From: Macrostomum lignano
Taxonomy: Eukaryota
Direction: 5' to 3'
NCBI GenBank assembly: GCA_002269645.1
Contig: NIVC01000568.1
Location: 436,039 to 500,038 of the forward strand
Length of the DNA stretch: 64,000 nucleotides
Positions within the stretch are counted from its first letter, which is position 1, and each line of letters starts with the position of its first letter. The position numbers were made by a program, and so were the translations under genes. The notes beneath the pieces were generated by a model. It did not search any database. It saw nothing but the letters and a program-made list of their open reading frames with translations, and was not told the origin of the DNA. Below are positions 5,740-41,217 of this stretch, piece after piece.

Positions 5740-6460
5740 TGCCAGGACCTGCACCGGAGCGGTTACGAAAATTAGATTTCTCGGTAGTTGCACGCACTCT
5801 TTTGCACTACTTGAGTAGTCTGATTTTCGTTCGGCATAGCTGTTTCCAGCAGGTAGTTCCTCTGGTAAAAGCGCTTACCGCACCCATTGGCTTTCCAGCT
5901 GCCTTAATCGTTTCCGGTGATCTTGTGTGCGTGCTTTCAGCTTGATTGGCTGCGGCAAGCAAGCTCGAAAGAGCTCGCTTCGCTCGCTCTTTCTCACTAT
6001 CTACTATCTATCTATCTGTCTATCAGACATGCACACTTTGCAGAGCTGTTTCGAAATTAGACGAATTTTTTCTTACTAGAAAACTGTATATCCAATATTA
6101 ATTTTTGTTGTCTCCACTAGCCAGACGTTTGTCAATTCCCACACTCTAAATTTACTTTGTAGAACTGATCAGAATACTGCAGCTGGCACCCATGAAGCTA
6201 TATCCATATTTGTAGAGAAATTCGTGCAATTTCTGCTAGAGACATTTTCCCTATCTAAACTTAAGTCGAGTTCCATTGTTTGAACGAAATTCAGATCCGG
6301 TTGCAAAACTCAAAAAGGAAATCTACAAGCTACATGTGCCAGCTACTTTATTTGTTGAAGTTTGCATCCGGCATTGGGTTGGTGTGACCTGCCAACATTT
6401 ATCATGGTAACTGCAAACTCTGATATTTACCACCGATCCAGCGCTACTGGGCAAACAGGT

Positions 6461-7063
<603 letters not shown>

Positions 7064-7219
7064 CCGACCGCCATCAGTTTTATATTTCCAGCCGAAGTTG
7101 TTTGCTTATTGATTCGATCAATATCTTCGATCATAAACGGATCTTTTAAAAACTTTGAGAGATGCAGTTAATCCTAAATATTGTTGCTGTCATCTCATAG
7201 TTAAAACAAAAAGTTTTAA

Positions 7220-7641
7220 TTAGACAACCAGCAGTAGTTTGATGCTTTTCAACGAGTAGCTTCCATCGGCGCCGCTCCAATAGTATCTGCCAACAGAGGA
7301 AGATCGAGTGGCAAAGTAGATTCCGTTTGGGTTGCAATGCGAGCAGGATTTGAACCACCAACCCCCATTGCCTCCCGAAGAAGAGCAGAATACAGAACTA
7401 TGCTGATCATTGTCTCTGTCCATTGTGGAAAACTGCATCCCCTTGTGATAAAATAGAGAGTCAGATGTTGTGTTGGAGCTGCCGGACAGATACTTGTCGA
7501 AGGTCATCGTGTAGTTAGTGCTGGCGTTTCCCACGGAGAAGCCGGAGTACTCGCAGACGTACAACACATTCGACCAGGTGACAGCTTCCACTCTCAGGCG
7601 CCTGGGCGTGTTTCCAGTCAGTTCGTGTATTTTTCGCAGAC
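7220..7641 (-). CDS. Fibrinogen C-terminal (FReD) domain protein, last exon
   Basis: Acceptor tcattcag|GT. Encodes LRKIHELT...GMQFSTMDRDND...C...GGWWFKSC..CNPNG, which are hallmark FReD motifs. TAA at 7220-7222. Confidence 0.9.
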
Positions 7642-7719
7642 CTGAATGACAATTGGCAAACACTGAGTAATTCACTCAGTTAAAATCTTAGATAGTTTGC
7701 ATTCTGCAGAACTGCTCAC

Positions 7720-7818
7720 CCATCCAACCGTCGACCTCGTTGCCGAATCCGTTTTCGTACTCGGACCAGCTCCTGGCGAAGCTCAGACTGGCGCCAGTTC
7801 GAATCAGCATGACTCCAT
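7720..7818 (-). CDS. FReD domain protein, middle exon (DGVMLIRTGASLSFARSWSEYENGFGNEVDGWMG)
   Basis: Matches the FxRxWxEYxxGFG motif. Acceptor ctaccag|AT and donor G|GTGAGC; both are phase 1 and consistent. Confidence 0.85.
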
Positions 7819-7917
7819 CTGGTAGATCTGTCACCGGTTTCATGAGCCCAATATTTACTAATAAGCAATAAGTATAAATGTAAGAAAGTATTTTCTGGTA
7901 TAATGATCTATCATTAC

Positions 7918-8056
7918 CTTTCCAGCGGATTCGATACACGAGGCTTCCAGGAGCAGTCGCGGCAAAGTCCGCATTCCTGGCAGCAGAGAAAAGGCAGAAC
8001 CGCGAGCCCGATACGAAAGCAGTGGCAGATAAATAATCTGACCAGGGACTACTCAT
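7918..8056 (-). CDS. FReD domain protein, first visible exon
   Basis: ATG at 8056 and donor AAAG|GTAATG in phase with the next exon. No signal peptide is visible, so further upstream exons are possible. Confidence 0.55.
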
Positions 8057-9722
8057 GAATCTGACAGTCTTTTATTGCCTGATAAATACTGCGGTTGCTC
8101 AGGCAACCGGATTTTCTCCCCTCCAACCCACTGTTTCCCTCTCTCACTCACTCACTATTTCTGCATTGGGATGGCTCTACCCTCAGTTTTCTACTTTAAG
8201 TAGCAAGTTGAGTATTCAGGTCGTGCCATTAACTAGTTTCTGATCTGCATAACTTTCTTTCTGTTTTTATCAAGGATGTATCTGCAAAATATTGTTAGTT
8301 ATCGGATAGGCTTTGCGCCCAGTTTTTCAAAACGCAATATTTTTAGTTAGCACTGTTTCGACTGCAAGATATGTAAAAGATTATGCAAAAGATGTAAATT
8401 ACCGGAAAGCACAAGCCATCATAAATTTTCCACAGAAACCCAGCCTTGACTTTTCGATGTCGGTTATAAACTAGGGCTTTAAGTTAGCCAAATCGATAGT
8501 TTGCTGACAGACCTGCAAGCAGTACAGTCCGGCAAGTGTGTTTATAAATACGAACTGCAAGGGCGCAATGATAAAAGGACGGCAGGCATCCATCTCGCTG
8601 CTCAGCCAAACTACGCGCCTTACTCCGCAGCCCGCGAATTCATTCGCCCCCTCCCAGGGGAGCAGAGCCTCGGGCACTCACGCTGGTTCTTTCCCGCGCC
8701 ATTTTTTTTTACGTTCGTCCATCTTTCCTTCCTGCGTTCTTTCGTTTCTATTTCCCATTTTCAGCGCTATCTCCCTCTCACTAGGATCGCGTATTCCTAA
8801 TTCCCTTTTTTCTTCTCCCGCACTCACTTTGCGTCCCGTGGAGGGCGGGGCAATATTGGCCGCATGTTCGGCACCACCTTGGCCAAAGGCTTCCGCCCGC
8901 TGCTCACACCCGGCGTGCCTGCTCGGGCCTCTCCGGCTGATTTATCTCACTATGGACCCAGTATATAGCCCATAATTCCTCTCACCACATTCTCCCTTCC
9001 CGGTTGCCCCCGCTCTTTCTAGGCACTTAGTCCCGGTACAATTAAGCCTTCTCTCCCGCTATCGGCTTATCTTCAACTCAACCTCCTCCTCTTAACTACC
9101 CTCGTTTTTTTTCTTCCGCAAAGCAGCGCGGCAAAGCAGCTGCACGGGCCTCTCCTTGGGCCCCGCATATTTCAGTTACCCGACGCACGTCAATAAGGCC
9201 GGGCACTTGCACGCAAAGAGCTCGCACAAGTGCATGGTAATCAGTTAGTAATCGGCACTTTGCTGCGCTCGTTTGTCTGTCTCCGAGTGTCTCTAATTAG
9301 GGCTGATTTCGAATCGCTCGTCGCAGGTTTATAGGTCTATTGCATTTATTCAGATTCATTTGTTTTCCACTCACGCGTCGTGCAATTTTGCAGACTAAAA
9401 AGAAGCTTATACATTTGTCAACAAGGAAACTCAAGTCACGAAAACTAATAATCCACCTATACTATATTGCGCTAAAGTGCTGGAAGTTACAATTTTTTGT
9501 CAAGGCATTACTTCCGAGCAATAGATGCAGTGCTGAGTTTAATATCTATTGGCGATTGAGCAGATGACTGGGGAGGGACAATCAATGTGTCACAGAATTC
9601 GCTTTTCTGTAATCCGCCATAGAATACGGTTCGTAACTTCTGAGGACTGATAGCGGGCTGAGCTACGAGCTATAATAAATAATCTCAACAGACGGCTTTG
9701 GTTTTCTATATAGTACGAGTAC

Positions 9723-10464
9723 TGTAATGACTTAGAAGTAAGTCTTGACGTTTAGTCCAAAGCTCTGCCTGGGAGGGGGTTTCACAAACTCGAAATTTCA
9801 CAACGTCGAAAGCACCCTCCTTCATAAGGTCGAAATATTCATAAGGTAGAAATTTCACAACATCGAAAACTTTAGCAAGAGACTTCATAAGGTCGAAATT
9901 TCACAAGGTCGCGAAAACTCAAATAGCAGCCACTTCACAAGTTTGAGTTTCGATGTTATGAAATTTCAACCTTGTGAAATTTCGACCTTATGAAAGTGGC
10001 TGCTTTTCGAGTTTTCGATGTTGTGAAATTTCGACCTTGGGAAATTTCGACCTTATGAGGTATTCTGCTAGAGTTTTCGATGTTGTGAAATTTCGACCTC
10101 GTAAATTTCGACCTTATGAAGTCTCTTGCTAAAGTTTTCGATGTTGTGAAATTTCGACCTTGTGAAGTTTCGACCTTGTGAAAGCACCCCCCTGGGAGCG
10201 GATCCCGTGAGCAGGCAGGCAGTCAGTAAAAACGTGGAGAGACCGAGGGGGTCGTGTTTGCCGTTATATTTCTGGGCTCTGGGCCCGAACCGTATAGGCG
10301 TGCTGTGGTACGAACACGTACAGGGGATGCGTAGCATGAAGCAATGGAGAGCGTGCAGTAGGGGTGACACGGTGAGTCAGTGAGGGGAACAATCGGTGCT
10401 GCTTAGTCAGTGGGAGAACGCATACTGGCCCTGCTGCGGAGGGTCCGCAGCCCAGGCCAGGACA
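9723..10464 (-). repeat. 3' LTR of the Gypsy element (TGTCC...TTACA; about 319 bp once the nested foldback insertion is removed)
   Basis: Begins with TG immediately after the PPT and ends with CA immediately before the TSD. Confidence 0.85.
9776..10190. mobile_element. Non-autonomous foldback element nested in the Gypsy 3' LTR; 8-bp TSD CCTGGGAG
   Basis: TSD at 9768-9775 and 10191-10198. Ends are GGGG...TTTCACAA and TTGTGAAAGCACCCC. The arms are inverted arrays of GAAATTTCAC/GAC(A/C)AGGTC-type subrepeats. Confidence 0.85.
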
Positions 10465-10723
10465 TCTCCCCCCTCAGGCTGGTGCTCAGCCGAGTCGAAG
10501 TCGGTCAGGAGGTACCCTGGCTCGCTCGGGTACCGCCGGGCCGGCGAGCCCGCCGCAGGCTTCACAATGCCATCGCCAGGCCGGGCCGGCGCCAGGTTTC
10601 CGTCGAAGAGCCGTCCTGGTGCCGCTGGCAGGTCGCCGGTCTCGGCAAACGTCCTGGTCGGTCTTGGCGACTGCTGGAGCGCTGCCTCCTGCTGCCGGTG
10701 ACGGTTGCTGACGAGCGATGGCG

Positions 10724-12811
10724 TCAGCAGGTCCAGCCGAGATCGGAGTCGTAGAGCAGTAGAGCAGCTGGCTGGGAGCTGCGCCTGTGGCCGAATGCAG
10801 CGTGTTGCGATAGGCGAGTAGGAGCTGCTGCAGAGCTCTCTGACAGTCCCGATTTCTTTAGGTGCTGCTTCAGCACCTTGACGAACCGTTCGGCTTGCCC
10901 GTTGGTCGCAGGATGAAACGGAGCTGAAGTCACATGCTCGATGCTGTTGAGACGCAGGAACTCGCTGAATTCGGATGACGTGAACTGAGCTCCGTTGTCA
11001 GACACCGGAGTCCGAGGTAGACCCTGGCGCGCGAAGATCTCGCGAAGGCAGTTGATGGTCGCGCCTGACGTCGTGCTGGTCAGCTGCTTTACCTCCGGCC
11101 ACTTACTGTGCGCGTCGATAAGCACAGGAAGGTGCGGCCGTCGACAGGGCCAGCGAAGTCGATGTGTAGCCGGGACCACGGCTCCGATGGGAAGGGCCAC
11201 GGGTGCACAGGCGCCTTGGGCGGATCGGCCTGGTTGAGCCGGCAGGTTTCGCACGCCTTGACGGAGTCCTCCACGTCCTTGTCCAGGCCGGGCCACCACA
11301 CGTAGCTGCGAGCGAGCGCCCGCATGCGGCTGGCTTCAGGTGGGCCTGGTGCAGTTCGCTGAGGACCTTCGAGCGGAGGGCGGACGGAACGATGACTCTG
11401 GACCCCCAAAGCAGGCAGCCCTGCTCGATGTTCAGCTCGTGCTGTCGGCCAGAGAACGCTTTGAGGCCCCCTGCAGCTGGGATCGGGCGCCCGACTGCAG
11501 ACACAGCAGCACTCTGCCGAGCTGCGCGTCCGTCCGCGTCCTCTGCGAAATCACCTTTGCCGTCAGGGCCGAACCGACATCTTCGTCGATGAGGAGGCAG
11601 TTCACAGCTGGCTCCTCGATGAACTGGGTGCCAGAGCGGAAGGCGAGAGAGCGAGTCGCAGTTGCCGTGCCGCGCCGTTCGTCTGAACTCCAGGCTGTAG
11701 TCGTAGCTGGAGAGCCGGATGGCCCAGCGCTGCATGCGAGCTGCGGCGTGTGCCGGATGGCCTTGCGCTCACCAAGCAGTCCAAGTAGGTGCTGGTGGTC
11801 CGTCACGATGACAAAGTGCCTCCCGTACAGGAACTGGTGGAACCGGTGCAGGCCGAACATGATGGCGAGCGCCTCTTCGTCCAGCTGCGCATAGTTGCGC
11901 TGAGCGGGGTCAGGCTGCGACTCGCGAAGGCAATCGCCTGCCTCTGGCCGCCGATCTTGTGGCGACAGGACCACCCCCAGACCGAATCGCGAGGCGTCGC
12001 ACTCCAGGTACAGTGACAAGTCTGGGTTGTAGTGGCACGAGAGCGCCCGAGGACAGCAGCAGTTGCTTGACTGCTCGAATGCTCGCTGCTGCGCGTCACC
12101 CCAGAACCACTTGTGTTCTTGGTCAGCAGCTGGTTCAGCAGCTGGCGCCACTACCGCAGACAGGTGCGGCATGAACTTCGAGTAGTGGGTCAGCATGCCG
12201 AGGAAGGCGCGCAGCTGCTAACGTCTTTGGTGCCGGCGCGTTCTGCACCGCTGCGACCTTGTCTGGCAGAGGCTTCAGGCCATGCGCGTCGATTTGATGA
12301 CCGAGGTAATCGACGGAGTGTTGACTGAGGTACTCGACGGAGTCTTGAAAGAACAGGCACTTGGACCTGTTCAGTCGAAGGCCGGCTTCCTGGAGACGCT
12401 GCAGCAAGCTGGTCAGGTTCTGTCTGTGCTGCACCTGAGTCTTGCCCGTGATGAGAATGTCGTCCACGAACAGTGGACGCCGTCGTGGTCACCCAACAGC
12501 GTCTCCAGTGTGCGCTGAAAGATGGCGCTGGCTGATTTGATGCGGAAGGGCAGTCTGTTGAGCTGAAACAGACCTCGCGGCGTGTTGATGACCAATACCA
12601 ATTAGGCCCGGCTCTCCTCGGACAGCGGCAGCTGTAGAAATGCGTTGGACAAGTCGAGCTTTGTCCACTTGCAGCCTCCGCCGAGCTTGGCGAAGATGTC
12701 CTCGATCTCGCCGTTCGCCTTCACTACCGGGACAATGGGAGCCGCCCAGTCTGAGTGCTTGATGGGCGTGATGATGCCTTGGGTCTTAAGTCGTCTCAGC
12801 TCCTCGTTCAC
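10724..12811 (-). pseudogene. Gypsy pol (RT, RNase H, integrase), broken by many frameshifts and deletions
   Basis: Fragments include WAAPIVPVVK, KLDLSNAFLQL, RLPFRIKSASAIFQR, DDILITG, LECDASRFGLG, NYAQLDEEALAI, RLHIDFAGP and SDNGAQFTS...APFHPATNGQAER. Confidence 0.9.
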
Positions 12812-12965
12812 CCGCTCCCTCAGAGCGTACGGGACCGGCCTGGCCTTGAAAAACCGCGGTGTGGCTGCTGCGTTAGGTCAGTGGTGTCAGAGCTGGTGCT
12901 GACTGAGTTGACCTGAGCCATGATTGCGTGACAGTCCAGTTTTAGTCGAGCCATCCAGTCTCGTC

Positions 12966-14080
12966 CTAGGAGAGGGAACTGCCCTGGGAGACCACGAGCA
13001 GCGGGAGGATTGCCTTCTGGCCATTGTGACTGACAGCGACTCTGGCTTCACCTAGCGGCTTGAACTGCTCGTTGGTGTATGTGCGTAACACCATCGCCGT
13101 TGGCTGTAGACGCAGTCCTGGGAGCCGCTCATCCGCCATTTTCTTTGGGATCAGCGTGACGGCTGATCCAGTGTCCAGCTCGAACGGGCAGTCGCGACCG
13201 TCCACCTCCAAAGTGACCGTCAAGGATCGGGACGATCGAGATCCGACGTAGAGGATCGAGCCCTGGCTGTCACTGTCCTGGTCCGACGCAGCTGCAGCGG
13301 AGTCCAGTTGCTTGACCCTGGCTGACCTGCAAACATTCTGGATGTGGCCTGTCTTCTCGCAGGCGTGGCACTTGGCATCGCGGAATTTGCAGCTTTGTCG
13401 ATCGTGACGGCCACCGCAGCTGGCGCACGGCTGCTGCTGGTGTGGGTGCGGCGACGCTAAGCAGCGAGTCAGGAGCTGCGGCCTCTCGTGCTTACGCGTC
13501 TGTCCGCTGCCAACATCCTTGCTGATCGCTGCGGCGGTCTCCAGTGTTCTGGGCGCGATCTCGCTCGCGTAGCGCTGCGCTGCCTCCATCGATGACACCG
13601 TCGCGACCATCAGGGCGTAAGTCAGCTTTGAGATTTCCAGCAGCTTTGAGCGGATGGCATCGTTCCTGAGACCGAAGACGGCCTGGTCTCGCAGTCTCTC
13701 CTCCAGCGCCGTGCCGAAGTTGCAGTGCAGAGTGGCTGCCTTCAGCCCTGCCAGGAAGGTGGCGAAGTCCTCTCCCGGCAATTGCATTCTCTGCTGGAAC
13801 TTGAAGCATGCGGCGATCTCGGATGGCGCGGGAGCGTAATGGTCTTGCAGAATTTTCTTTAGGCCGTCGTATGACCTTTCTGAAACCTTGTCCGGCTGAC
13901 ATAGGTTGCGAAGCACCGTGTAGGCGGTTTCTCCTATGGCAGTGCAAAGTGTGGCCACTTTGGTGGGCTCCTCAGTGACTTTAGCGCATACGAAGTATTG
14001 TTCGAGTCTCTCAATGTAAACTTCGAAGTCGGAGTCCCTTGATAACTCCGGAATGCGGCTAAAGGCTGAGCTCGTCGCCA
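12966..14080 (-). CDS. Gypsy gag-protease ORF (start codon lost)
   Basis: The frame is open from the PBS (ATSSAFSRIPELSRDSDFEVYIERLEQYF) through two Cys/His knuckles (CASCGGRHDRQSC; CHACEKTGHIQNVC) to the protease motif ELDTGSAVTLI. Confidence 0.85.
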
Positions 14081-16650: not shown

Positions 16651-17293
16651 CTTATCTCACCTGGCCCGCAGTCATGCGCTATCTGACTATTAAGTTAAAA
16701 AAAGTTTGCCAACCCCTGTTTTAGAGCGAGGTAACTGCATAATTAAATTAAGGTCCAACTGAATTTAAAACCAACTTTATAATGTTGGAATGCACGCGAT
16801 TTAAAGGTTGGAATTTAAGCTTCGTTAGTCCCATTGGTTATGTTTACTCTTTATTTCTAAGAGGGTTCGTACAGGCGCCGTAAATCTGTCGGGGTGTGGA
16901 ACGGCAAAATTGAAATGGCATGCTTTCCACAGTGAACTGGTTCGCAACGGAAATTCAAGGTGCTGCTGCACGTTTGCACATTTACAATCGTGCGCATTTC
17001 CAAGAAAATTTCTAGGAATCTGCGACGCCTGAACTTCGATAGCCATAGGCTAAGATCTTTATCGGCAGATTTCACTATCTGCCTGGCTAACTAGTTGGCA
17101 ACATACCTGATAAGTTCAAGCATATAGTTTCATGCAGTTTATAAGCTTGATCGCACCGAGGCTTCGGGCCGAGAGCAATCTCAAGAACTTATAAAGAAAG
17201 AAAGATTCGCCCAAATACCAAATTTCAGCTTAAAAGAAAACTATTAAATTTTATCATTTCTTTAACTGACAACGGAAGCAGTGAAAGAAAAGC

Positions 17294-17426
17294 ATGGCAT
17301 CCTATCTGTGCTCATCTGCTCCCGTGCTGCTGCTGATTATATTCATAGGCAGCACTGCGGCTGCTTCAACTGGGCGGAAGATTTCCTGGCGCCAAGCCAA
17401 AGGCCGGGTCAATTGCACAACTGATC
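17294..17426 (+). CDS. Secreted staphylococcal-type nuclease, exon 1 (signal peptide)
   Basis: Encodes MASYLCSSAPVLLLIIFIGSTAAA (hydrophobic core, then small residues). Donor C|GTGAGT at 17427, phase 1. Confidence 0.75.
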
Positions 17427-18160
17427 GTGAGTCTTACTGTATAGCTAGGTGCTCTATCGAAATGCTATATACTAAAATAGAAAATTTTTTAATTGGGTCC
17501 TTTAAAGAACCTGGACAAAGCAGAAGCACAGAATTTCATGAAACCAAAAGCTTCCACTATAAAAATATCGCCTGTTAACTTCGGTGAAATTATGACATAA
17601 ACGTTTCCATCTATTCTATTAGAGATGAGTGAATATGAATTTATTCAGTATTCATACATATTCACTCAACATTCCACAACGTAAAAGTCAAGACACCTAA
17701 AACACAAGCTATATTTAAAATCACTACATGCAGCTAACTATAAAAGGGACGCCAACTAAAGCGCCGGAACCGAAGTAAAGCTCTGGACTGAACCAAGCCG
17801 ACCCAAATCTATTACTTCTCTGACCAGTCAACTAAAAACACTGAGAAACTACACCCCATCCGGGTGCTCTCTTTGTGCTTCCAAGTATTTACTCAGGAAG
17901 CTACTTAAGTTCTAAGTATAGACTCGTTCACACCGCCATCAAAATAAAGTCAATTTTAGCGCGATCACACGGATAATTCACACTTTTCGACGCTTTGTAG
18001 CTCGGGCATCACTGATTTAGTGATTTGTTCGATGTTGTGAATTAGTTTCACCAAACAATAACCTTGTCCAACCAAGCATATTGACTCATTGGAACTCTAC
18101 TCATTGACAGAATGAACTCAGTAAAAACAAAATCATTATCTTATCGCCTCAAAAATTCAG

Positions 18161-18630
18161 CCAAGTATCTGTGCGGCCGAGTCAAATCGGTGCACGACGG
18201 CGACTCGTTGCGCATCATCCCGGAGACGAACGACGACGGCGACAGGGCGTCGGTTCGTGTCCGCCTGATGCAGATCGACGCGCCGGAGTTGAGCCAAGCT
18301 CACGGACGAGATTCTCGCAAAGCACTGGCCAGCAGGCTGCCGCGCGGTACCCGAGTCTGCGTGATCTCACCTGGTCGGGATTCCTATCATCGAATACTTG
18401 GATTTGTCTGTCTAGCTAAAGACGACATCGCCTACCGGATGCTGGCCGAAGGACACGCCTGGTGCTACCACAACACCTGCAACTTGCGGTACAAAGCAGC
18501 CACCAGCGCTGCCAGGGTCGCAGGGCTCGGTCTGTGGACGCCCGGACAGACGCCAATGGCTCCGTGGGCTTATCGTCGGTTTCAGCGGAGACGCGCCAGA
18601 AAGCACCGACAGCAAGGAAAGAAAGAATGA
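18161..18630 (+). CDS. Secreted staphylococcal-type (SNase/thermonuclease) nuclease, exon 2
   Basis: Acceptor aaaattcag|CC at 18160 is in phase with exon 1. Motifs are VHDGDS, VRLMQIDAPE, RDSYHRILG, MLAEGHAW and AR..GLGLW...PMAPW. AATAAA at 18701. Confidence 0.9.
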
Positions 18631-19186
18631 GGGGCAAGAGCTGGAATGCAACTGTAGCTTTTGGGATGATGCCTTTGATTTACAGCTTCAATAATACAAC
18701 AATAAAAACAATAAGGTGATAAGAGCAATCGTGTGTCCTAATGAATTTCCATTTACCAACACGTAATATGATATATGATTATTACACACCAAATCATGTT
18801 ACGCTGAAGCAGTGTCTGACACTATTTTTTCGTGCATCGTAGTGAGTCCAGTGTCCAGCAGTAAACAAACCAGCTCAATACGCTAAAAATAAAGAACTTC
18901 TAAAATTTAAAGCGCCCTATAATGTGTCTGTCTACTAAATAATGAGTTACTAAGTAGTATGTTACGCTAATGTAGACAGATAAATTACGATCGAATTTCC
19001 GTTTTTCAACGCAATAGCATTCAAATAGCCTGACTTATTAATGATAGTATCAAACGATACTTTCTCCTTTTTTCGTTATTTTGAAAAGAACGATAGGGTA
19101 CTCGACGGTACGCTCGTATGAGTAAATTAAAAGGGCAGTGGCAGTACTACTAGCGTAGGGAATATGGATCGTTTCTTCTATCATTA

Positions 19187-25506: not shown

Positions 25507-28059
25507 CTAAGAAGCGTCGACTCGATTTCGGCACCACTTTGTCCACAACTTTTTTACTTGTTGTTGACTCGCTTCTCTGTCGGATTCAGGGCTGGAGCTT
25601 TGGCTGCTGCTGATGTAGTCCAACTCAAATTCATCAGGCGTAGCTGATCTGAACGTTTTGTTGTCTCGACTGTCCACCATCTCGGTGGTATTGTGATTGG
25701 TAGGAATTGTGTAAGCGGCAGGAAAATTTGACCTACCTGCAGATGTAGACGGTGCAGTCCGTTCGCGTGGCAGCTCTGCGCAACTTCCTGTGTCTACGTG
25801 TACCTCAATAGGAGAAGCAGAGCTGCTTTCATCCGTCTGTTTATCTTCATCGCAGTCGGAAACTAAAATACTTCCAACTTCCATAGTTGCGCCGTTTAAG
25901 TTGTGAATGTAACTATTATTTAACACGGTGGTTGGGTCTGTAAAAAGTAGTTCCCTTCTGTCTTTTGGATTGTCACAAGTCGTATGATTCGCAACGGCAG
26001 CTGCTGGTTGACTAATTTGTCGATAGCTATTATTAAAGGCATCAAATTCAGCGGAAACTCCAAACTTAATGAGGTCTGCATCATCAAGTTCGTTGTCAAC
26101 CGGCGCAGTTTGTGAGTCGATGACGAATGAAAAGCCTGCGTCATTATTATTACTGGCGGAACTGCGGGACGAAAGCTTTTCCTCTCTAGAACCTAGCACT
26201 TCAAATATGACGCGTCCACTGTCTTCGGTAGTTACATGTACCTCTTCTGGTTGGGCAGTTTTGTTTGCTGCAGAAAAGTCGATCAGGTCTTGCTTCTTCG
26301 CATGGGCAGTTTCGTTTGCTGCAGAAAAGTTGACCCGGTCTTGCTTCTCCTCATGGGCAGCTTTGTTTGCAGCAGAAAAGTTGATCAGCTGGTCTTGCTT
26401 CTCCTCATGGGCAGTTTTGTTTGCAGCAGAAAAGTTGATCAGCTGGTCTTGCCTCTCCTCATGGGCAGTTTTGTTTGCAGCAGAAAAGTTGATCAGCTGG
26501 TCTTGCCTCTCCTCATGGGCAGTTTTGTTTGCAGCAGTAAAGTTGATCAGCTGGTCTTGCTTCTCCTCATGGGCAGTTTTGTTTGCAGCAGAAAAGTTGA
26601 TCAGCTGGTCTTGCCTCTCCTCACGGGCAGTTTTGTTTGCAGCAGAAAAGTTGATCAGCTGGTCTTGCCTCTCCTCATGGGCAGTTTTGTTTGCAGCAGT
26701 AAAGTTGATCAGCTGGTCTTGCCTCTCCTCATGGGCAGTTTTGTTTGCTGCAGAAAAGTCGATCAGATCTTGCTTCTCCTCATGGGCAGTTTTGTTTGCG
26801 GCAGAAAAGTCGATCAGGTCTTGCCTCTCCTCATGGGCAGTTTTGTTTGCAGCAGTAAAGTTGATCAGCTGGTCTTGCTTCTCCTCATGGGCAGTTTTGT
26901 TTGCGGCAGAAAAGTCGATCAGGTCTTGCCTCTCCTCATGGACAGTTTTGTTTGCAGCAGTAAAGTTGATCAGCTGGTCTTGCTTCTCCTCATGGGCAGT
27001 TTTGTTTGCGGCAGAAAAGTCGATCAGGTCTTGCCTCTCCTCATGTGCAGTTTTGTTTGCTGTAGAGAAGTCGATCAGGTCTTGCCTCTCCTCCATTTCG
27101 TACACATAGCTGTCGCTGTCATCGTCATCATGATCTAGTGATCCTCCTGATACATGGAATTCGTGTATTTTCGCGGCACTGCTGCTACTAGACTCCTCAG
27201 CGATTTTACTGAGTATGAACTCGCGTCCATCTTCATCTCCCTGCCTTGTCACTTCAAGTGCTTGTACACGAGGAAAGAGACAATCAGCTGTGCAAACACG
27301 GCCAGGGCCTTCTATAGTGGGCGTAAAGCTGAACGTATGGTTAATAGGCATATCTATGGATATTTCGCTCTGCATTGCGACATCAAAGGCGATCACGAAG
27401 CACTTTCCAATATCCTCGACCTCGTCGGAATAAACCATCACGTCAGATTCCAAGGCTGGATGAATATTGTTGTCCATTTCAGTTACCTTGCAGCTGTGAA
27501 GTGAGGCTTCGGAGTTGCTGTAAGAGTCTTCCGATTCGACTGCGTCAGTAGACAGTACATGAAACGATTCTGTTGTTTCTCTTCTAATTCGCTTTGGAAT
27601 TCCTGAGCTGGAGTTGCGCAACCGAGACCGCGCAGACCGCGTTGTTGCTGTCGACGAGCCATCTTCCGTTTCTGGTGTCTCCCAGTCGCCGCTCGCTTGT
27701 TCCGTCAACTCCGGTCGTTGAAAATCAATTTGTTCAACGCCGCCATGCGGCTGCCTGAACAGATCTCGAATTCTCCCGGCAGGATGTTGCCGCTGATACA
27801 CGCTGACTGGCGCAGGCTTAGCGACGAATTTATTGGCGGTGTTAAACTGACTGTCAGCTTGATCTTCGCTATCTGTCTCTTCAGTCGAGCAGCTACCGTC
27901 GATTAGTACAGGTGACCATTCACAGGTGCTCTCATAGCATTCTGTCGTAGTTTCCATTACAACTCTAGCGGCTCTAACTGAGCTGGCTTGAGAGGCTGTA
28001 GTAGAATTTTCGCTAAAGTCGCGCGAGTGCGAAATTTTTGATGCTGTAATTTGCCGCAT
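25507..28059 (-). CDS. 850-aa acidic low-complexity protein with 16 tandem 17/18-aa repeats (EERQD[Q]LI[D/N]F[S/T]AANKTAH)
   Basis: Uninterrupted 2.55-kb ORF with ATG. The non-repeat parts are also open. No recognisable folded domain or signal peptide. Confidence 0.8.
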   Translation of the reverse strand: MRQITASKISHSRDFSENSTTASQASSVRAARVVMETTTECYESTCEWSPVLIDGSCSTEETDSEDQADSQFNTANKFVAKPAPVSVYQRQHPAGRIRDLFRQPHGGVEQIDFQRPELTEQASGDWETPETEDGSSTATTRSARSRLRNSSSGIPKRIRRETTESFHVLSTDAVESEDSYSNSEASLHSCKVTEMDNNIHPALESDVMVYSDEVEDIGKCFVIAFDVAMQSEISIDMPINHTFSFTPTIEGPGRVCTADCLFPRVQALEVTRQGDEDGREFILSKIAEESSSSSAAKIHEFHVSGGSLDHDDDDSDSYVYEMEERQDLIDFSTANKTAHEERQDLIDFSAANKTAHEEKQDQLINFTAANKTVHEERQDLIDFSAANKTAHEEKQDQLINFTAANKTAHEERQDLIDFSAANKTAHEEKQDLIDFSAANKTAHEERQDQLINFTAANKTAHEERQDQLINFSAANKTAREERQDQLINFSAANKTAHEEKQDQLINFTAANKTAHEERQDQLINFSAANKTAHEERQDQLINFSAANKTAHEEKQDQLINFSAANKAAHEEKQDRVNFSAANETAHAKKQDLIDFSAANKTAQPEEVHVTTEDSGRVIFEVLGSREEKLSSRSSASNNNDAGFSFVIDSQTAPVDNELDDADLIKFGVSAEFDAFNNSYRQISQPAAAVANHTTCDNPKDRRELLFTDPTTVLNNSYIHNLNGATMEVGSILVSDCDEDKQTDESSSASPIEVHVDTGSCAELPRERTAPSTSAGRSNFPAAYTIPTNHNTTEMVDSRDNKTFRSATPDEFELDYISSSQSSSPESDREASQQQVKKLWTKWCRNRVDAS
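26251..27093 (-). repeat. Protein-coding minisatellite (7 x 51 bp + 9 x 54 bp = 843 bp)
   Basis: Units were counted from the translation; all unit lengths are multiples of 3. Confidence 0.95.
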
Positions 28060-33400: not shown

Positions 33401-35411
33401 CATAGGTACTTATGAATTCTAAAACAATTGAACATATAGTCAAAGCATAAGCTATGCTAATAGTCATTTTTTATTACTAAATTGGCAATTTGCAAATCAA
33501 GGCAATCTAGCAAGTTTCTTTTAAAATTACTTTATAAGTCAAATGGCCTAACCTAAGAAATGCATGCTTCCTTGGTTATTAGACTGATGCAAATTGCAGT
33601 GGAGCTAAAGATACACAAATTCCATTTAGTGCTACAAATTGGCAAGAAAGATGACATGATCAAAGCTTGAGAACAACCATGAGAGTACTATGTCTTATAA
33701 ACCGGCTTTCTAAGCATATGGGTAGACTTTTATCTCAAAGGCCAGATAAAGAATGCAGCTTATGGCTAAAGGGCAGATGAGAGTAGAAAGAAGGAATTGA
33801 CAATTCAAAAAGGAGAGGCAAGAAGGGGATAAAAGAAAAGAAAGAAAATAATAGGAGAGATAAGAAGGTGAGGACAATAAGAGAAAGAAGGGAGAGAGGA
33901 AAAGTGAGATAAGAGAGGAAAGAGTAGAGAGGAGAAAGAAGAGAGTAAATGCATGAAAGAGTAGAGAGCCATATGAGAGAGAAGTAAAGAGAAGAAAGAG
34001 GTGAAAGGGAAGAGAAGAGAGAAGAGAGGAAATAGTAAGAGAAGATAAAAGTTTCAAAGGATCCAAGGGATGTAAGGAAAGTCAAAGGCAAAGGCCAAAG
34101 CTTGTCAATATATGTTTTAGAGTCAGATAGAATTGCTTGAATTCAATCCTTGACATTCAGCACCCCAGCCAATAATATCAAATGTTTGCTTCAAACTCCA
34201 CTTTATATTTACCTATATCCTACTAACTATTAAAAAGTTTTTGATTGAGTATGGCCTCAGACTTCAGAATATATGCAAAATAGTTCCAGGGATTGGAATT
34301 CCCTAGGTTCAAAATCTATCAGTTTCAATAGCTTGTATAAATATAAATAAAAAACAAAGAATAATAGTTATAGACAAAACATTTTTGTAAAATTTGTATA
34401 ATTTATTTCCCCACTTGGTATTGTACAAAATATGCTTTTTTATATATGCTATACACTAATGCTTTTTGTATATACTATTATACACTGTGCTGTCTATGTT
34501 AGACAGTGTAGACTCTGTAGAGCTTGACCACTTTCTGTTACACTGCACTAGGTAATGTGATGCTAGACTTACTTTCTGCATTAGAATTTCCTACAAAAAG
34601 GCCACCTTCCTAACTATGGCTATTACCCCTGTAAGTTATTATCAAGACTAATGATGGCCTAAACTGAGTTTATAGATTTTACTGCATTGTATTTTGGTAA
34701 TTGTGTTATCATTTTGTTAATATTTTGTTTTAGTTCCAGTTACACATTTTGGCACCAATTTGAATTTAATGTGCACATCTACAGTTATGCTAGTTAGGTA
34801 TATGGAATTTCTATTATCTTAGACAAGGCCAAAACAACTAAAATATATGATGTTTCAAAAAGTAAAGTTCTGTGGGACTTCTACCAGTTTCTATGCTTTT
34901 GGAGCCTAACATTTGGAATCCCAGGTCCTCAGCTTGCTTTTCAATGTTTTAATTGATAACAATTAAATTATAAAGTAATCTATTCAGAACTTCTCTACAA
35001 TGACTTTATTATTGTTATTGTTATTATATTATTAGGGCAAGCATTTATTTTATTGAGCTTTATACCCTTATCCTATATATGAAGTCCTAAGTAGCTAAAA
35101 AGTTTAGAATAACTTTTTTTAGCCAAACCTTTTTAACATCAGAGCAAAGAAAAGAGGGACTATTGTATGAAAAGTAACTTAGGATAGCAAATAGCTACTT
35201 TGTATAGTAGATAAGGATGGGTATTATTAGCATAGATTGATGCTGATAAAAATGAGAATAAGTACTTTTATTTTCCTTTGGCTTACTTGGCTGACATTAT
35301 GTGTAAGTTCGATGCTTGATTTGTCCTTGCCTTTCATGTTCTAAGTCGCACAAGTGTTTCTGTTTGATGCCTCAATTGCAAATAATTCGAACTCATTTTT
35401 ATTCAACCCAG

Positions 35412-36374
35412 CTGCAAAACATCGGCATCAACAATGCCAGCATCGGGTTCTCCACCCTCACCATGGAGTCGGATCGGTTCATCTGCATCCGAGAGAAAGT
35501 TGGCGAAACCGCCAAGTAGTGATTGTGGACATGAACGATCACAATAATCCTACTAGGCGGCCAATATCGGCCGATAGTGCCATCATGAATCCCGTTAGCA
35601 AAGTGATCGCGCTGAAGGCCGGCAAGAGTTTGCAAATATTCAACATCGAATTGAAATCGAAAATCAAATCGCACGCCATGACCGAAGAGGTCACCTTCTG
35701 GCGTTGGATTACTGTCAATACTATCGCTTTAGTGACGGAGACGGCCGCTTATCATTGGAGTCTGGAGGGCGATTCGACTCCAGTGAAGATGTTCGATAGG
35801 CATGCCTCGCTGTCCGGCTGTCAGATAATTAACTATAGGTGCGACAATAGCCAGAAATGGCTGCTAATCATAGGCATATCGGCCCAGCAGAATCGCGTGG
35901 CTGGAGCTATGCAGCTGTATAGCGTCGAGCGCCGCGTCTCCCAGCCAATAGAAGGCCACGCCGGCGTGTTTATGGAATTCCGCGTCGAAGCCAATGCCCA
36001 GCCGTCTAATCTGTTCTGCTTCGCCAATAGAGGCCTGCAGGGAGCCAAGCTGCACATTATTGAAGTTGGCCAGCCACCGTCTGGCAATCAGCCCTATCCG
36101 AAGAAGCAGGTAGATCTGTTCTTCCCACCCGAGGCCACTTCGGATTTTCCCGTTGCTATGCAAGCCTCTTCTAAGCACGGCGTTATCTACATGGTCACTA
36201 AGTACGGCTATATTCACCTGTATGACTTGGACACGGCCACCTGTCTCTATATGAACCGGATCAGTAGCGAGACTATTTTTGTCACCGTACCGCACGAAGC
36301 CAGCGGCGGTATAATGGGCGTTAATAGGAAAGGCCAAGTGCTCAGTGTCAGCATGGATGAGGACAATGTTATCG
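35412..36374 (+). CDS. CLTC: Clathrin heavy chain, exon 2 (terminal beta-propeller); 1-bp deletion near 35513
   Basis: Encodes [28 protein letters not shown] and [13 protein letters not shown]...[10 protein letters not shown]. Acceptor cccag|CTG, donor G|GTTAGT. Confidence 0.95.
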
Positions 36375-36439
36375 GTTAGTTTGAATCTGTTTTTAAACTG
36401 TTTAGCTCTTTAGGCATTCGAGTGGTTGGCGGTAATTTT

Positions 36440-36770
36440 ATAATAAAACAGTTTTTTGCGACGGTCACCTTAAGCTCAAAGAGTCGGGCTGAGGGGGTTT
36501 GCGGCAGTTTCAATGAAGATGTTTGATTTGCGGCAGTTTCAATGAAGATGTTTGATTTGCGGCGGTCACTTCAAAGAGTCGGGCTAGGGGGGGGTTGGCG
36601 GCAGTTTTATCGAGACTGATCTGTCGGCGGTCACTTCAAAGAGTCGGGCTAAGGGAGTTGGCGGCAGTTTCAATGAAGATGCTTGATCTGTTTGCGGTCA
36701 CTTTAAAGAGTTCGGACTGAGGGGGGGGGGGTTGCGGCGGTTTCAATAAAGATGTTTGATCCGTTGGTTG
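36440..36770. repeat. Degenerate tandem repeat in CHC intron 2
   Basis: Recurrent CGGTCACTT(C/T)AAAGAGTCGGGCT...GGGGG and GCAGTTTCAATGAAGATGTTTGAT blocks. Confidence 0.8.
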
Positions 36771-36823
36771 TGACTTCAAATTAATCTAGCTAATTAACCT
36801 AACACCTGGCACTCTCACTTTAG

Positions 36824-37338
36824 GCTACGTGACCAACAATCTGCAAAATCCCGATTTGGCCCTGAAGCTGGCTTCGCGCAACAACCTTCAAGGCGCGGAC
36901 GATCTGTTCCTGCGCAAATTCAACGCCCTGTTCCAGCAGGGCAACTACTCCGAAGCGGCCAAAGTGGCCGCCAGCGCGCCAAAGGGTATCCTGCGTACGC
37001 CGCAAACTATTCAGCGATTTCAGCAGGTGCCAGTGCAGCCTGGCACTACTTCGCCAATGCTGCAGTACTTCACCATCCTGTTAGACCAGGGCCAGCTGAA
37101 CAAATACGAGAGCCTGGAGCTGTGCCGACCAGTGCTGCAGCAGGGTCGCAAACAGGTTGTTGAGAAATGGTTGAAAGAGGACAAGCTGGAATGCTCTGAG
37201 GAGCTTGGCGACCTGGTGAAACAGACTGATCCAACACTGGCTCTGAGCGTCTACCTGAGAGCCAATGTGCCCCACAAGGTCATTCAGTGCTTTGCCGAGA
37301 CTGGGCAGTTCCAGAAGATTGTGCTCTACGCCAAGAAG
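36824..37338 (+). CDS. CLTC: Clathrin heavy chain, exon 3
   Basis: Encodes [21 protein letters not shown]...[10 protein letters not shown]. Acceptor tttag|GC, donor AAG|GTGAGA. Confidence 0.95.
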
Positions 37339-37454
37339 GTGAGACTAACAGTTGGTCTTGAGGCTTATGGCCAATTTAGGGTCTGTTAATAGGTCAGGCT
37401 CGGTCTTAAGGTCATGATTTGGGCCCTTGTTGGTTGCTTCTCACATGTAGGTTA

Positions 37455-38925
37455 TAAATGGGCCTAATGAGTCATGCGCTGGGTCAAGTATCAAATCTTA
37501 AAATGAGTCTGCCACTGGGTCAAAAATCGAGCTCTAAAGTGGGTCATGCGCTGGGTCAAGTATCAAGTCTTAAAATGAGTCTGCCACTGGGTTAAGGATC
37601 GAGCTGTAAAGTAGGTCGGGCACTGGGTCATGGATCAAGTCGAAAAATGGGTCGGGCACTGCAAGGATCGAGCTTTAAAGTGGGTCAGGCACTGGGTCAA
37701 GGATCGAGCTCTAAAGTGGGTCGGGCACTGGGTCATGGATCAAGTCGTAAAATGGGTCGGGCACAGGATCAAAGATCCGATTTAAAATGGGTCAGCCACT
37801 GGGTTAAGGATCGAGCTCTAAAGTGGGTCGGGCACTGGGTCAAGGATCGAGCTCTAAAGTGGGTCGGGCACTGGGTCATGGATCAAGTCGTAAAATGGGT
37901 CGGGCACAGGATCAAAGATCCGATTTAAAATGGGTCAGCCACTGGGTTAAGGATCAAGCTCTAAAGTGGGTCGGGCACTGGGTCAAGGATCGAGCTCTAA
38001 AGTGGGTTAGCCATTGGGTCAAGGATCGAGCTCTAAAGTGGGTCAGCCATTGGGTCAAGGATCGAGCTCTAAAGTGGGTCAGCCATTGGGTCAAGGATCG
38101 AGCTCTAAAGTGGGTCGGGCACTGGGTCATGGATCAAGTCGTAAAATGGGTCGGGCACAGGATCAAAGATCCGATTTAAAATGGGTCAGCCACTGGGTTA
38201 AGGATCAAGCTCTAAAGTGGGTCGGGCACTGGGTCAAGGATCGAGCTCTAAAGTGGGTTAGCCATTGGGTCAAGGATCGAGCTCTAAAGTGGGTCAGCCA
38301 TTGGGTCAAGGATCGAGCTCTAAAGTGGGTCAGCCATTGGGTCAAGGATCGAGCTCTAAAGTGGGTTAGCCATTGGGTCAAGGATCGAGCTCTAAAGTGG
38401 GTCAATCAAGGATCGAGCTCTAAAGTGGGTCAGCCATTGGGTCAAGGATCGAGCTCTAAAGTGGGTCGGGCACTGGATCAAGGATCGAGCTCTAAAGTGG
38501 GTCGGGGTCAAGGATCGAGCTCTAAAGTGGGTCATGGGTCAAGGATCGAGCTCTAAAGTGGGTTAGCCAAAGGATCGAGCTCGTGGGTCGGGCAGGATCA
38601 AGGATCGAGCTCTAAAGTGGGTCAGATTTCAAATCGATGTGGGTTAGCCATTGGGTCAAGGATCGAGCTCTAAAGTGGGTCGGGCACTGGATCAAGGATC
38701 GAGCTCTAAAGTGGGTCAGCCATTGGGTCAAGGATCGAGCTCTAAAGTGGGTCAGCCATTGGGTCAAGGATCGAGCTCTAAAGTGGGTCAGCCATTGGGT
38801 CAAGGATCGAGCTCTAAAGTGGGTCAGCCATTGGGTCAAGGATCGAGCTCTAAAGTGGGTCGGGCACTGGATCAAGGATCGAGCTCTAAAGTAGGTCGAG
38901 CACTGGGTCAAGGATCAAGTCCTAA
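37455..38925. repeat. 36-bp minisatellite with higher-order blocks in CHC intron 3
   Basis: Unit GGGTCAAGGATCGAGCTCTAAAGTGGGTCAGCCATT. A variant block GGATCAAGTCGTAAAATGGG...GATCCGATTTAAAATGG recurs near 37738, 37881 and 38131. Confidence 0.95.
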
Positions 38926-39189
38926 TTGGGCAAGGCTCAAAGATCTGATTCGAGTCCTCAATGAACCGGGTACTGTGGTGTCAGGAAACAGCCTTAGCCG
39001 GCTCAAGAGTAAAGCTCTGGATGGGTCACGCAGTGTGACAAGATTCGACATTAGCTGGTTTAAGAATCCAACTCTGAAAAGAACCGAGGAAAAAGAATGG
39101 AGCCTTTGATTTTAAGTTAATGAATTTTGAACGGCAGCTTTGGCCTTCGATTAGCAACATTATTTTCCCCATTCCCCCCTTCTTAACAG

Positions 39190-39708: not shown

Positions 39709-40107
39709 GTAAATATGTCATCGTGTTCGCTGTGGTGCTACTGACCAGTCAGTAGTATGATCTCTTCTCCCTCCCGACCTATAGGCTCATTTATCTGCTT
39801 ATCGTTCGCGCCATTCCAAGCAAACTCTGCGGCCCTGTCGCTTCTCTGTCCCCATTTTATTGCCCCACCTTATCGCTCGCCCCTTGGCTGGGGAGAGGTT
39901 TTTGTCGCCATGTACATTATCTGCCACGCTGACTGATGTACACTGTGCCTGCACTGATATCACGTGACTCTTCTAAAATCGATTTTGCAAATTTAGTTTG
40001 CCCTAGGCAAAAAATAGTTACCACTTTCTGTGCTTGCTACTGAATGGAAAGTAGTTAAAACGATAACTAAAAATAGACTAATCCCTCATCCTCCCACTAT
40101 TACCCAG

Positions 40108-40485: not shown

Positions 40486-40549
40486 GTGGGCTATCGAATG
40501 GTTCTAAGAATCGCTCTTTAGCTGTAAATTAACTTCCGAAGTCATTCAT

Positions 40550-41195: not shown

Positions 41196-41217
41196 ATTCT
41201 CACAATACCTGTCGCAG

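What the first reader, a model, noticed from the sequence alone, without database searches (positions are those of the whole stretch)
17294..18630. Bacterial-type single-domain staphylococcal nuclease as a spliced, secreted animal gene (horizontal-transfer candidate)
Seen in the sequence: a signal-peptide exon (17294-17426) splices in phase through GTGAGT...TTCAG onto one SNase domain, giving 200 aa, with AATAAA downstream. Residues matching staphylococcal nuclease D21 (HDGDS), R35/D40/E43 (RLMQIDAPE) and D83/Y85/R87 (DSYHR) are all present. The DAPE..Q.HG and GLGLW...PW signatures resemble bacterial thermonucleases. Established knowledge: the canonical animal SNase protein is the cytoplasmic multi-domain Tudor-SN (SND1), while single-domain forms are typical of bacteria, fungi (Lcl3) and plants (CaN). 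Inference: this is an acquired gene domesticated with a host intron and secretion signal. It may be a Ca2+-dependent extracellular nuclease for mucus, biofilm or dietary DNA, or for defence. Added Cys residues (CTTD..LC, VC..VC, WCYHNTC) would suit disulfide bonding.
Basis: partly seen in the sequence, partly recalled or inferred. Interest (0 to 1): 0.82.

Follow-up and report, generated by a model that had tools for sequence, protein, structure and literature searches.

The report
Bacterial-type secreted nuclease gene in flatworm
A real, spliced gene of the flatworm Macrostomum lignano encodes a small, apparently secreted DNA/RNA-cutting enzyme whose nearest relatives outside the worm are bacterial. 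It most likely came from bacteria long ago and has since multiplied into a small gene family.

Summary
Exons 17294-17426 and 18161-18630 (+ strand) join in phase across a GTGAGT...TTCAG intron to give 200 aa. This is identical to the GenBank protein BOX15_Mlig022653g4/g2 of Macrostomum lignano, whose annotation was built from transcripts. It is a single SNase domain (Pfam E 4e-12) with every Ca2+-binding and catalytic residue of staphylococcal nuclease, and its AlphaFold model matches that fold.

It is not contamination. Four syntenic contigs carry it, next to an LTR retroelement and the clathrin heavy chain gene.

The bacterial-origin reading is supported, with corrections:
- Outside M. lignano the best matches are proteobacterial thermonucleases (40-47% identity, 80-100 bits). 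Human SND1 scores 6 bits.
- The gene is not a singleton. Two further M. lignano paralog groups (47% and 41% identical) share the phase-1 intron position and six conserved cysteines. The acquisition, or at least the intron, therefore predates an old family expansion.
- The bacterial relatives have their own signal peptides, so a host-added secretion signal is not shown.

Tree support is weak. Other Macrostomum species could not be searched, and tissue and activity are unknown. I rate it a plausible old bacterium-to-flatworm transfer and a new member of a known enzyme family, of moderate interest.

The parts
17294..17426 (+). Exon 1. It holds the start codon, the signal-peptide-like segment (residues 1 to about 25, 17294-17368; hydrophobic core APVLLLIIFIGS followed by TAAAS) and a basic linker with the N40-C41-T42 sequon and the first conserved Cys. 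It ends with the first base of codon 45.
   Evidence: hydropathy; helix 9-23, low pLDDT; first in-frame ATG, Kozak context. The exon boundary equals that of the GenBank model.
17427..18160 (+). Single spliceosomal intron: 734 nt, phase 1, GTGAGT...TTCAG, 37% GC.
   Evidence: Introns of the same phase and homologous position occur in the two paralog groups. A second, independent UniProt model (P0002) uses the same acceptor. The GenBank annotation is transcript-derived (PMC5730564).
18161..18630 (+). Exon 2. It encodes the complete SNase (OB-fold) nuclease domain (fold about residues 46-178; Pfam match 77-171 = 18256-18540), the basic C-terminal helix (179-199) and the TGA stop. Key codons: D59 18202-18204, R79 18262-18264, D84 18277-18279, E87 18286-18288, R122 18391-18393.
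   Evidence: residue mapping; AF2 core pLDDT above 95; Foldseek: S. aureus nuclease, TM 0.77.
18701..18706 (+). AATAAA polyadenylation signal, 71 nt after the stop codon.
   Evidence: sequence only.

Best explanation
This is a functional nuclear gene of the flatworm Macrostomum lignano. It encodes a secretory-pathway, Ca2+-dependent, sugar-non-specific nuclease of the staphylococcal-nuclease (thermonuclease) family.

Origin. An ancestor of the gene was most likely acquired from a bacterium, with Pseudomonadota-type thermonucleases as the closest relatives. It then gained one phase-1 intron just upstream of the catalytic domain, evolved six conserved cysteines, and expanded into at least three paralog groups. 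The window copy is one of four near-identical homeologous or haplotype copies of one paralog.

Mechanism (inferred from conservation with S. aureus nuclease). The signal peptide is removed around residue 25. D59, D84 and the A85 carbonyl bind Ca2+. E87 activates the attacking water. R79 and R122 stabilise the phosphate transition state. The products would be 3'-phosphorylated mono- and oligonucleotides from DNA or RNA. The cysteines probably pair as C41-C49, C111-C128 and C146-C151, and together with the N40 sequon they fit an extracellular or gut-lumen enzyme.

The biological role is most likely digestion or scavenging of extracellular nucleic acid from food or biofilm. That part is a guess.
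For: Shown:
- The gene model is identical to the transcript-derived GenBank protein.
- The Pfam SNase match is above threshold.
- All catalytic and Ca2+-binding residues are conserved in the window gene and in both paralog groups.
- The AF2 model has pLDDT 86, with the core above 95, and Foldseek gives S. aureus nuclease at TM 0.77.
- The locus is collinear on four contigs at 98-99.6% identity and is flanked by an LTR retroelement, a Fibrinogen_C fragment and the multi-exon clathrin heavy chain gene.
- An exhaustive HMMER search of 1.84 billion representatives found only M. lignano paralogs as closer hits (P0074 at 47%, P0075 at 41%), and then thermonucleases.
- Every named non-Macrostomum hit is bacterial.
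- The GTDB scan gives Pseudomonadales and other Gammaproteobacteria, Pusillimonas and similar taxa at up to 42% identity.
- P0001 scores 80-100 bits against the proteobacterial enzymes, 5.9 bits against human SND1 SN1-SN2 and -0.2 bits against S. aureus nuclease.
- All three paralog groups have one phase-1 GTGAGT..CAG intron three codons after the first mature Cys.
- The N-terminus has a hydrophobic core followed by small residues.

Inferred: enzyme activity, secretion, disulfide pairing and biological role.
Against: - The NJ tree places the worm genes as one clade among bacterial or unnamed sequences, but with only 31% bootstrap support. No donor lineage stands out, since many lie at about 40% identity.
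- Divergence between the worm paralogs (41-47%) is as deep as divergence from bacteria. An ancient eukaryotic gene with many losses cannot be strictly excluded.
- Two or more unidentified, eukaryote-looking Logan contigs encode a related intronless SNase (P0101/P0257). Other eukaryotes may therefore hold similar genes.
- The protein collection contains no Logan-derived copies even of M. lignano's own gene. Absence from other Macrostomum species is therefore untested.
- I could retrieve no direct RNA-seq junction reads, expression site or enzymatic data.
- The strongly basic C-terminal tail could in principle act as a nuclear signal if the N-terminal signal is not used.
Confidence: 0.7

Rival explanations
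1. Vertical inheritance. The family is an ancient eukaryotic or metazoan single-domain SNase that survives in Macrostomum and a few other lineages and was lost almost everywhere else. The similarity to bacterial enzymes would reflect slow evolution of the fold.
For: Paralogs within the worm are as diverged as the bacterial hits. Eukaryote-like contigs of unknown origin encode a related protein that shares the WCYRN.C motif. Bootstrap support for any placement is low.
Against: No named eukaryotic protein other than M. lignano's own appears among the best 120-150 hits in collections that include nr and UniRef. Human SND1 scores only 6 bits against 80-100 bits for Proteobacteria. P0101/P0257 do not group with the worm family (1% bootstrap). 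Vertical descent would need very many independent losses.
Confidence: 0.17
2. Bacterial contamination or assembly artefact. The SNase ORF would be bacterial DNA mis-joined to flatworm sequence.
For: Exon 2 alone is an intact 172-codon ORF at 60% GC with bacterial best hits.
Against: The gene has a canonical spliceosomal intron and a separate first exon. The same gene with more than 8 kb of collinear flanks lies on four contigs. The flanks hold a retroelement and the clathrin heavy chain gene. Two further paralog loci on contigs of 354 kb and 608 kb have 3.3-3.5 kb introns at the same position. Codon GC3 is 0.64, similar to clathrin at 0.71. The model comes from a transcript-based annotation.
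Confidence: 0.01
3. The gene is real and of bacterial origin but is not secreted. It would work inside the cell, for example in lysosomes or phagosomes of gut cells, in apoptotic DNA degradation, or membrane-anchored like plant CAN or fungal Lcl3.
For: Flatworm digestion is largely intracellular (general knowledge). The N-terminal hydrophobic segment could act as a signal anchor. The basic C-terminal helix resembles a nuclear localisation signal.
Against: The hydrophobic core is short (about 12 residues) and is followed by TAAAS, as in cleavable signals. Six cysteines are conserved in all paralogs. There is no N-terminal Gly2 for myristoylation. The basic tail is also present in secreted or periplasmic bacterial homologues.
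Confidence: 0.12

Closest known systems
Proteobacterial 'thermonuclease family protein' / YncB-type micrococcal nuclease homologues (e.g. Pusillimonas minor WP_185779956.1; Pseudomonadales and Gammaproteobacteria MAG proteins)
   Same: A single SNase domain of about 140 aa follows an N-terminal signal peptide. Shared motifs are V.DGD(T/S), (I/V)DAPE..Q.(H/Y/W)G, D.YGR, GLW...PW.(W/Y)R and a basic C-terminal tail. Identity is 40-47% at 80-100 bits.
   Different: The worm gene is interrupted by a spliceosomal intron and sits in an animal chromosome. It has a 19-residue basic linker with an N-glycosylation sequon and six family-specific cysteines. It lacks the Excalibur Ca2+-binding C-terminal domain that many of the bacterial hits carry.
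Staphylococcus aureus nuclease A (Nuc; PDB 1STN/1EY0)
   Same: Same OB-fold (Foldseek TM 0.77). All Ca2+ ligands and catalytic residues are conserved.
   Different: Only 15-18% identity in the structural alignment, and no significant pairwise sequence score (-0.2 bits). Nuc has no cysteines. It is Gram-positive rather than proteobacterial type.
Tudor-SN / SND1 (animal multi-domain SNase-like protein; PDB 4QMG)
   Same: The SN domains share the fold (Foldseek E 4e-9, 20-23% identity).
   Different: SND1 has four tandem SN domains plus Tudor and a fifth SN domain, and is cytoplasmic or nuclear. By general knowledge it lacks the canonical SNase catalytic set. It scores only 5.9 bits against the worm protein. 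The worm protein is a single catalytic domain with a signal peptide.
Plant CAN1/CAN2 and fungal Lcl3 single-domain SNase-like nucleases
   Same: They are eukaryotic, single SNase domain and, for CAN, Ca2+-dependent nucleases (PMC3505149).
   Different: CAN proteins are anchored to the plasma membrane by N-myristoylation and palmitoylation and have an extra N-terminal region. Lcl3 has a transmembrane anchor (general knowledge). The worm protein has a cleavable-type signal and no Gly2. The sequence relationship was not tested here because I had no verified sequences.
Plasmid-borne thermonucleases of conjugative plasmids (RP4 ParB-type)
   Same: They belong to the same family. At least 5000 plasmid records match, 3751 of them conjugative, which shows how mobile the gene is among bacteria.
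   Different: Identity is only about 34%, lower than for chromosomal proteobacterial and MAG homologues. Nothing indicates that a plasmid copy was the donor.

Membership tests
SNase / thermonuclease family (Pfam PF00565) | Sequence match to the family profile above the curated threshold | tested here: met
   46.9 bits against a cut-off of 21, E 4.3e-12. A profile of the protein plus bacterial homologues hits S. aureus thermonuclease at E 1e-16.
SNase / thermonuclease family (Pfam PF00565) | OB-fold beta-barrel with three helices | tested here: met
   AF2 model with core pLDDT above 95 and the strand/helix order of SNase. The top Foldseek hits are S. aureus nuclease, TM 0.77 normalised to the target.
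SNase / thermonuclease family (Pfam PF00565) | Ca2+ ligands (D21, D40, T41 carbonyl) and catalytic R35, E43, R87 | tested here: met
   D59, D84, A85, R79, E87 and R122 align to them. They are also conserved in paralogs P0074 and P0075.
SNase / thermonuclease family (Pfam PF00565) | Ca2+-dependent hydrolysis of DNA and RNA to 3'-phosphate products | not testable with these tools
   Needs a recombinant enzyme assay.
Tudor-SN / SND1 | Tandem SN domains plus a Tudor domain, about 900 aa | tested here: not met
   The protein is 200 aa with one SNase match and no Tudor domain. It scores 5.9 bits against human SND1 SN1-SN2.
Plant CAN-type membrane SNase | N-terminal myristoylation/palmitoylation motif (Gly2 plus Cys) and an extra N-terminal region | tested here: not met
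   The N-terminus is MASYLC, with no Gly2. A hydrophobic signal-like segment is present instead. The feature is defined in PMC3505149.
Bacterium-to-animal horizontally transferred gene | Closest relatives outside the recipient lineage are bacterial, with no comparable hits in other animals | tested here: met
   Caveat: many hits are unnamed, and other Macrostomum species are not represented in the collection.
Bacterium-to-animal horizontally transferred gene | Physical integration in the host genome (host flanks, spliceosomal intron) | tested here: met
   There are four collinear contigs. Clathrin heavy chain, a retroelement and a hAT element lie in the window. The intron is GT-AG.
Bacterium-to-animal horizontally transferred gene | Well-supported phylogenetic nesting within a bacterial clade | tested here: inconclusive
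   In the NJ tree of 263 domains the worm family is monophyletic among bacterial or unnamed sequences. Bootstrap support is 31%, and no eukaryotic single-domain outgroups were available.
Bacterium-to-animal horizontally transferred gene | Transcription and correct splicing in the host | tested here: inconclusive
   The evidence is indirect only. The GenBank models derive exclusively from RNA-seq and transcriptome assemblies (PMC5730564), and the model equals my splice. No reads or expression tables could be retrieved.

The most novel reading that the evidence does not exclude
A Macrostomum-lineage family of disulfide-stabilised, secreted nucleases arose from one old bacterial gene transfer. 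It then gained an intron and diversified into at least three paralogs with different extracellular jobs, for example gut digestion of diatom or bacterial nucleic acid, clearing eDNA-based biofilm from the epidermis or adhesive organs, or reproductive secretions. This would be a rare documented case in flatworms of a transferred bacterial enzyme becoming a multi-gene secreted toolkit.
Probability: 0.4. Interest if true: 0.55.

Novelty: new member of a known kind. Interest (0 to 1): 0.45.

Why it matters
Well-supported bacterium-to-animal gene transfers that produce expressed, intron-bearing and expanded gene families are still few. I found none reported for free-living flatworms in the searchable literature.

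M. lignano supports transgenesis (PMC5730564) and, by general knowledge, RNAi. The function of an acquired secreted nuclease could therefore be tested directly in this animal. The enzyme itself is a compact, probably disulfide-stabilised thermonuclease variant.

The enzyme class and the kind of event are both well known, so the finding is incremental rather than conceptually new.

Tried and rejected
- Single-sequence phmmer against the PDB returned only a spurious hit to a designed trefoil protein. A profile was needed.
- The gene IDs (Mlig022653, 008456, 018861, 002410, 031327, 013652) were absent from all full texts and from the supplements of three M. lignano papers. The stored tables are truncated. 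No expression data were obtained.
- The metazoan HGT compendium has no searchable supplement and does not mention nucleases or flatworms.
- The last cluster look-up of the NJ sister sequences gave no organism names.
- I tried to identify the organism behind P0101/P0257 (Logan runs ERR14224704-6 and DRR639838) from flanks, ORFs and contig ends. This failed. The contigs look eukaryotic, with no flanking ORFs, but remain unassigned.
- P0220/P0221, listed in the same cluster as P0074, are not SNases. They are a neighbouring gene, linked through a fused UniRef model.
- dN/dS between the four copies is not possible, because there are only 0-4 exon substitutions.
- NCBIfam gives only sub-threshold matches to EcnA and NucI, so the protein belongs to no named equivalog.
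- GC and GC3 do not discriminate between host and donor.
- I did not build a tree with Lcl3 or CAN, because I had no verified sequences for them.

Full report
WHAT IS THERE

The + strand of the window holds a two-exon gene. Exon 1 (17294-17426) and exon 2 (18161-18630) are separated by a 734-nt, AT-rich (37% GC) intron with a consensus GTGAGT donor and a TTCAG acceptor. The join is in phase (phase 1) and gives a 200-aa protein plus a stop codon. The ATG is the first in-frame ATG after a stop and has a good Kozak context. An AATAAA lies 71 nt after the stop.

The protein is 100% identical over its full length to GenBank 'hypothetical protein BOX15_Mlig022653g4/g2' of Macrostomum lignano. The annotated gene span equals 17294-18630 exactly. 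The window is the last 64 kb of contig NIVC01000568.1 of assembly GCA_002269645.1. That assembly's GenBank annotation was built only from RNA-seq and transcriptome assemblies plus TransDecoder (PMC5730564). The splice junction therefore has indirect transcript support.

A second public model (UniProt A0A1I8H60, P0002) uses the same acceptor but a weaker GTCAAT donor at 17408. It lacks a start codon and is the poorer model.

WHAT THE PROTEIN IS

- Pfam assigns a single SNase domain (PF00565, E 4e-12).
- I aligned the protein through a family HMM to the S. aureus nuclease sequence, which I first verified against PDB 1EY0/1STN. Every functional residue is present: D19/D21 = D57/D59, R35 = R79, D40 = D84, T41 = A85 (a main-chain ligand), E43 = E87, D83/Y85/R87 = D118/Y120/R122, and Y113/Y115 = W145/Y147.
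- An AlphaFold2 model built on 78 homologues has mean pLDDT 86, with more than 95 through the domain. It shows the SNase order of strands and helices. The N-terminal helix (9-23) and the linker (31-42) have low confidence, as expected for a signal peptide and a flexible linker.
- Foldseek against the PDB returns S. aureus nuclease (TM 0.77 on the target) and the SN domains of human SND1.
- The N-terminus has a 12-residue hydrophobic core followed by TAAAS.
- The mature part is very basic (35 K+R against 15 D+E). It holds an N-C-T sequon and six cysteines (41, 49, 111, 128, 146, 151).

Secretion, disulfide pairing and Ca2+-dependent activity are inferences from these features. They are not results.

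IT IS A HOST GENE, NOT CONTAMINATION

- The gene with more than 8 kb of collinear flank occurs on four contigs at 97.8-99.6% identity (L001-L004). This matches the known duplicated karyotype of the DV1 line.
- The window also contains an LTR retroelement (integrase, RT-RNase H, protease), a Fibrinogen_C fragment, a hAT/BED transposase and the multi-exon clathrin heavy chain gene at 35.3-46.2 kb.
- Coding GC3 is 0.64, in the range of the clathrin exons at 0.71.
- Copies g4 and g2 encode identical proteins. Copies g3 and g1 share a 9-bp insertion in the signal peptide and an S119Y change. Copy g1 also has a 1-bp deletion in the ATG and a 1-bp insertion at the position of 18531. These may be real decay or long-read indel errors.

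IT IS ONE OF A FAMILY

The word-indexed search found only bacterial-type hits beyond the copies themselves. The exhaustive HMMER scan of 1.84 billion representatives showed that the closest non-self proteins are two other M. lignano groups:
- P0074 (Mlig008456/013652; 47% identity, E 8e-45)
- P0075 (Mlig018861/002410; 41% identity, E 1e-32)

Both keep all catalytic residues and the same six cysteines. Both have the same gene structure: one phase-1 GTGAGT...CAG intron three codons after the first mature cysteine, with introns of about 3.3-3.5 kb. The intron and the cysteine pattern therefore predate a deep paralog divergence. The catalytic site has been maintained throughout, which argues for long-term function.

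WHERE IT CAME FROM

- After the worm paralogs, the hits are thermonuclease-family proteins. All named ones are bacterial: Pusillimonas, Hydrogenophaga, Methylomonas, Azoarcus, Didemnitutus, Urbifossiella, Myxococcales, and many Gammaproteobacteria and Pseudomonadales MAGs. The scan of GTDB species genomes gave up to 42% identity.
- In a like-for-like comparison P0001 scores 80-100 bits against these proteins, 5.9 bits against human SND1 SN1-SN2 (sequence verified against 4QMG) and -0.2 bits against S. aureus nuclease.
- No named animal, fungal or plant protein appears among the best 120-150 hits.
- The family is extremely common on conjugative proteobacterial plasmids, although at only about 34% identity. 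This shows its mobility among bacteria.
- An NJ tree of 263 non-redundant domains recovers the worm genes as one clade among bacterial or unnamed sequences. Bootstrap support is only 31% on 139 columns, and no donor clade is resolved.

CAVEATS

- Two related proteins (P0101, P0257; 76% identical to each other and 27-32% to the worm protein) come from Logan contigs that look eukaryotic. Their flanks are AT-rich with no ORFs, the genes are intronless, and each has a signal-anchor-like N-terminus and a shared WCYRN.C motif. Their organisms could not be identified, and they do not group with the worm family (1% bootstrap).
- The protein collection holds no Logan-derived copies even of M. lignano's own gene. 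It therefore cannot show whether other Macrostomum species or other free-living flatworms have the family.
- I had no verified Lcl3 or CAN sequences to add to the tree.
- Bacterial homologues carry their own signal peptides. The worm signal may be inherited rather than host-supplied. The intron sits exactly at the border between the variable N-terminal region and the conserved domain, so either intron gain or exon addition is possible.

VERDICT

The most likely explanation (about 0.7) is an old bacterium-to-flatworm transfer of a proteobacterial-type thermonuclease. The gene was domesticated through an intron, eukaryotic start and poly(A) signals, and a cysteine framework. It then expanded into a small family of secretory nucleases.

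The main rivals are:
- vertical descent with massive loss (about 0.17)
- contamination (about 0.01)
- a non-secreted intracellular role (about 0.12), which is compatible with the same origin

The gene is already annotated as a TNase-like protein, but I found nothing published on it. It is a new member of a known enzyme family and of a known kind of evolutionary event. It is moderately interesting, mainly because M. lignano is experimentally tractable.

Noticed in passing
L009 (NIVC01000111.1, gene 6001-10088) and L010 (NIVC01000025.1, gene 10001-13967): Two further M. lignano SNase paralog groups (Mlig018861/002410 and Mlig008456/013652) are 41% and 47% identical to the window protein. Both have the same phase-1 intron position and the same six cysteines.
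   Followed up: yes
L005-L008 (Logan ERR14224704, ERR14224705, ERR14224706, DRR639838): Intronless genes encode a 205-217-aa SNase with a signal-anchor-like N-terminus and a WCYRN.C motif. The contigs look eukaryotic, with AT-rich flanks and no ORFs. The organisms are unknown. The genes may be an independent eukaryotic acquisition of the same bacterial family. The 324-aa P0257 model is a read-through artefact of a 205-aa ORF.
   Followed up: partly
L004 (NIVC01001516.1), positions equivalent to window 17296 and 18531: Copy g1 has a 1-bp deletion in the start codon and a 1-bp insertion that frameshifts the C-terminus (annotated as the 166-aa P0003). It is either a decaying homeolog or long-read indel errors. 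Copies g3 and g1 also share a 9-bp insertion in the signal peptide and an S119Y change.
   Followed up: partly
window 17408 (alternative donor GTCAAT): UniProt A0A1I8H60 models the same locus with a different donor and frame. It gives a protein with no start methionine and no signal peptide. This looks like a mis-annotation.
   Followed up: yes
window 17190-17195: TATAAA lies about 100 nt upstream of the ATG. It is a possible core promoter element, judged from sequence only.
   Followed up: no
window 10724-13958 (- strand): A degraded Ty3/gypsy-type LTR retroelement with integrase, RT-RNase H and aspartyl protease ORFs in several frames lies about 3.3 kb upstream of the nuclease gene.
   Followed up: partly
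window 25507-28059 (- strand): An 850-aa ORF is annotated as a gene but has no Pfam match. It holds about 17 tandem copies of a roughly 17-aa unit (EE[RK]QD(Q)LI[DN]F[ST]AANKTAH). The syntenic copy L004 is shorter (757 aa).
   Followed up: no
window 35354-46170 (+ strand): This is the clathrin heavy chain gene, with propeller and CHCR repeats in many exons. Several of its introns are filled with minisatellites that create long spurious ORFs on both strands, for example at 38014-39109 and 40529-41140.
   Followed up: partly
window 7220-7675 (- strand) and 54841-56355 (+ strand): The first region is a fragment encoding a Fibrinogen_C domain, probably one exon of a ficolin- or tenascin-like gene. 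The second is an intact-looking 504-aa BED-zinc-finger/hAT-type transposase ORF.
   Followed up: partly
plasmid collection: Thermonuclease-family genes related to the worm protein (about 34% identity) occur on at least 5000 plasmid records, mostly conjugative plasmids of Enterobacteriaceae.
   Followed up: no
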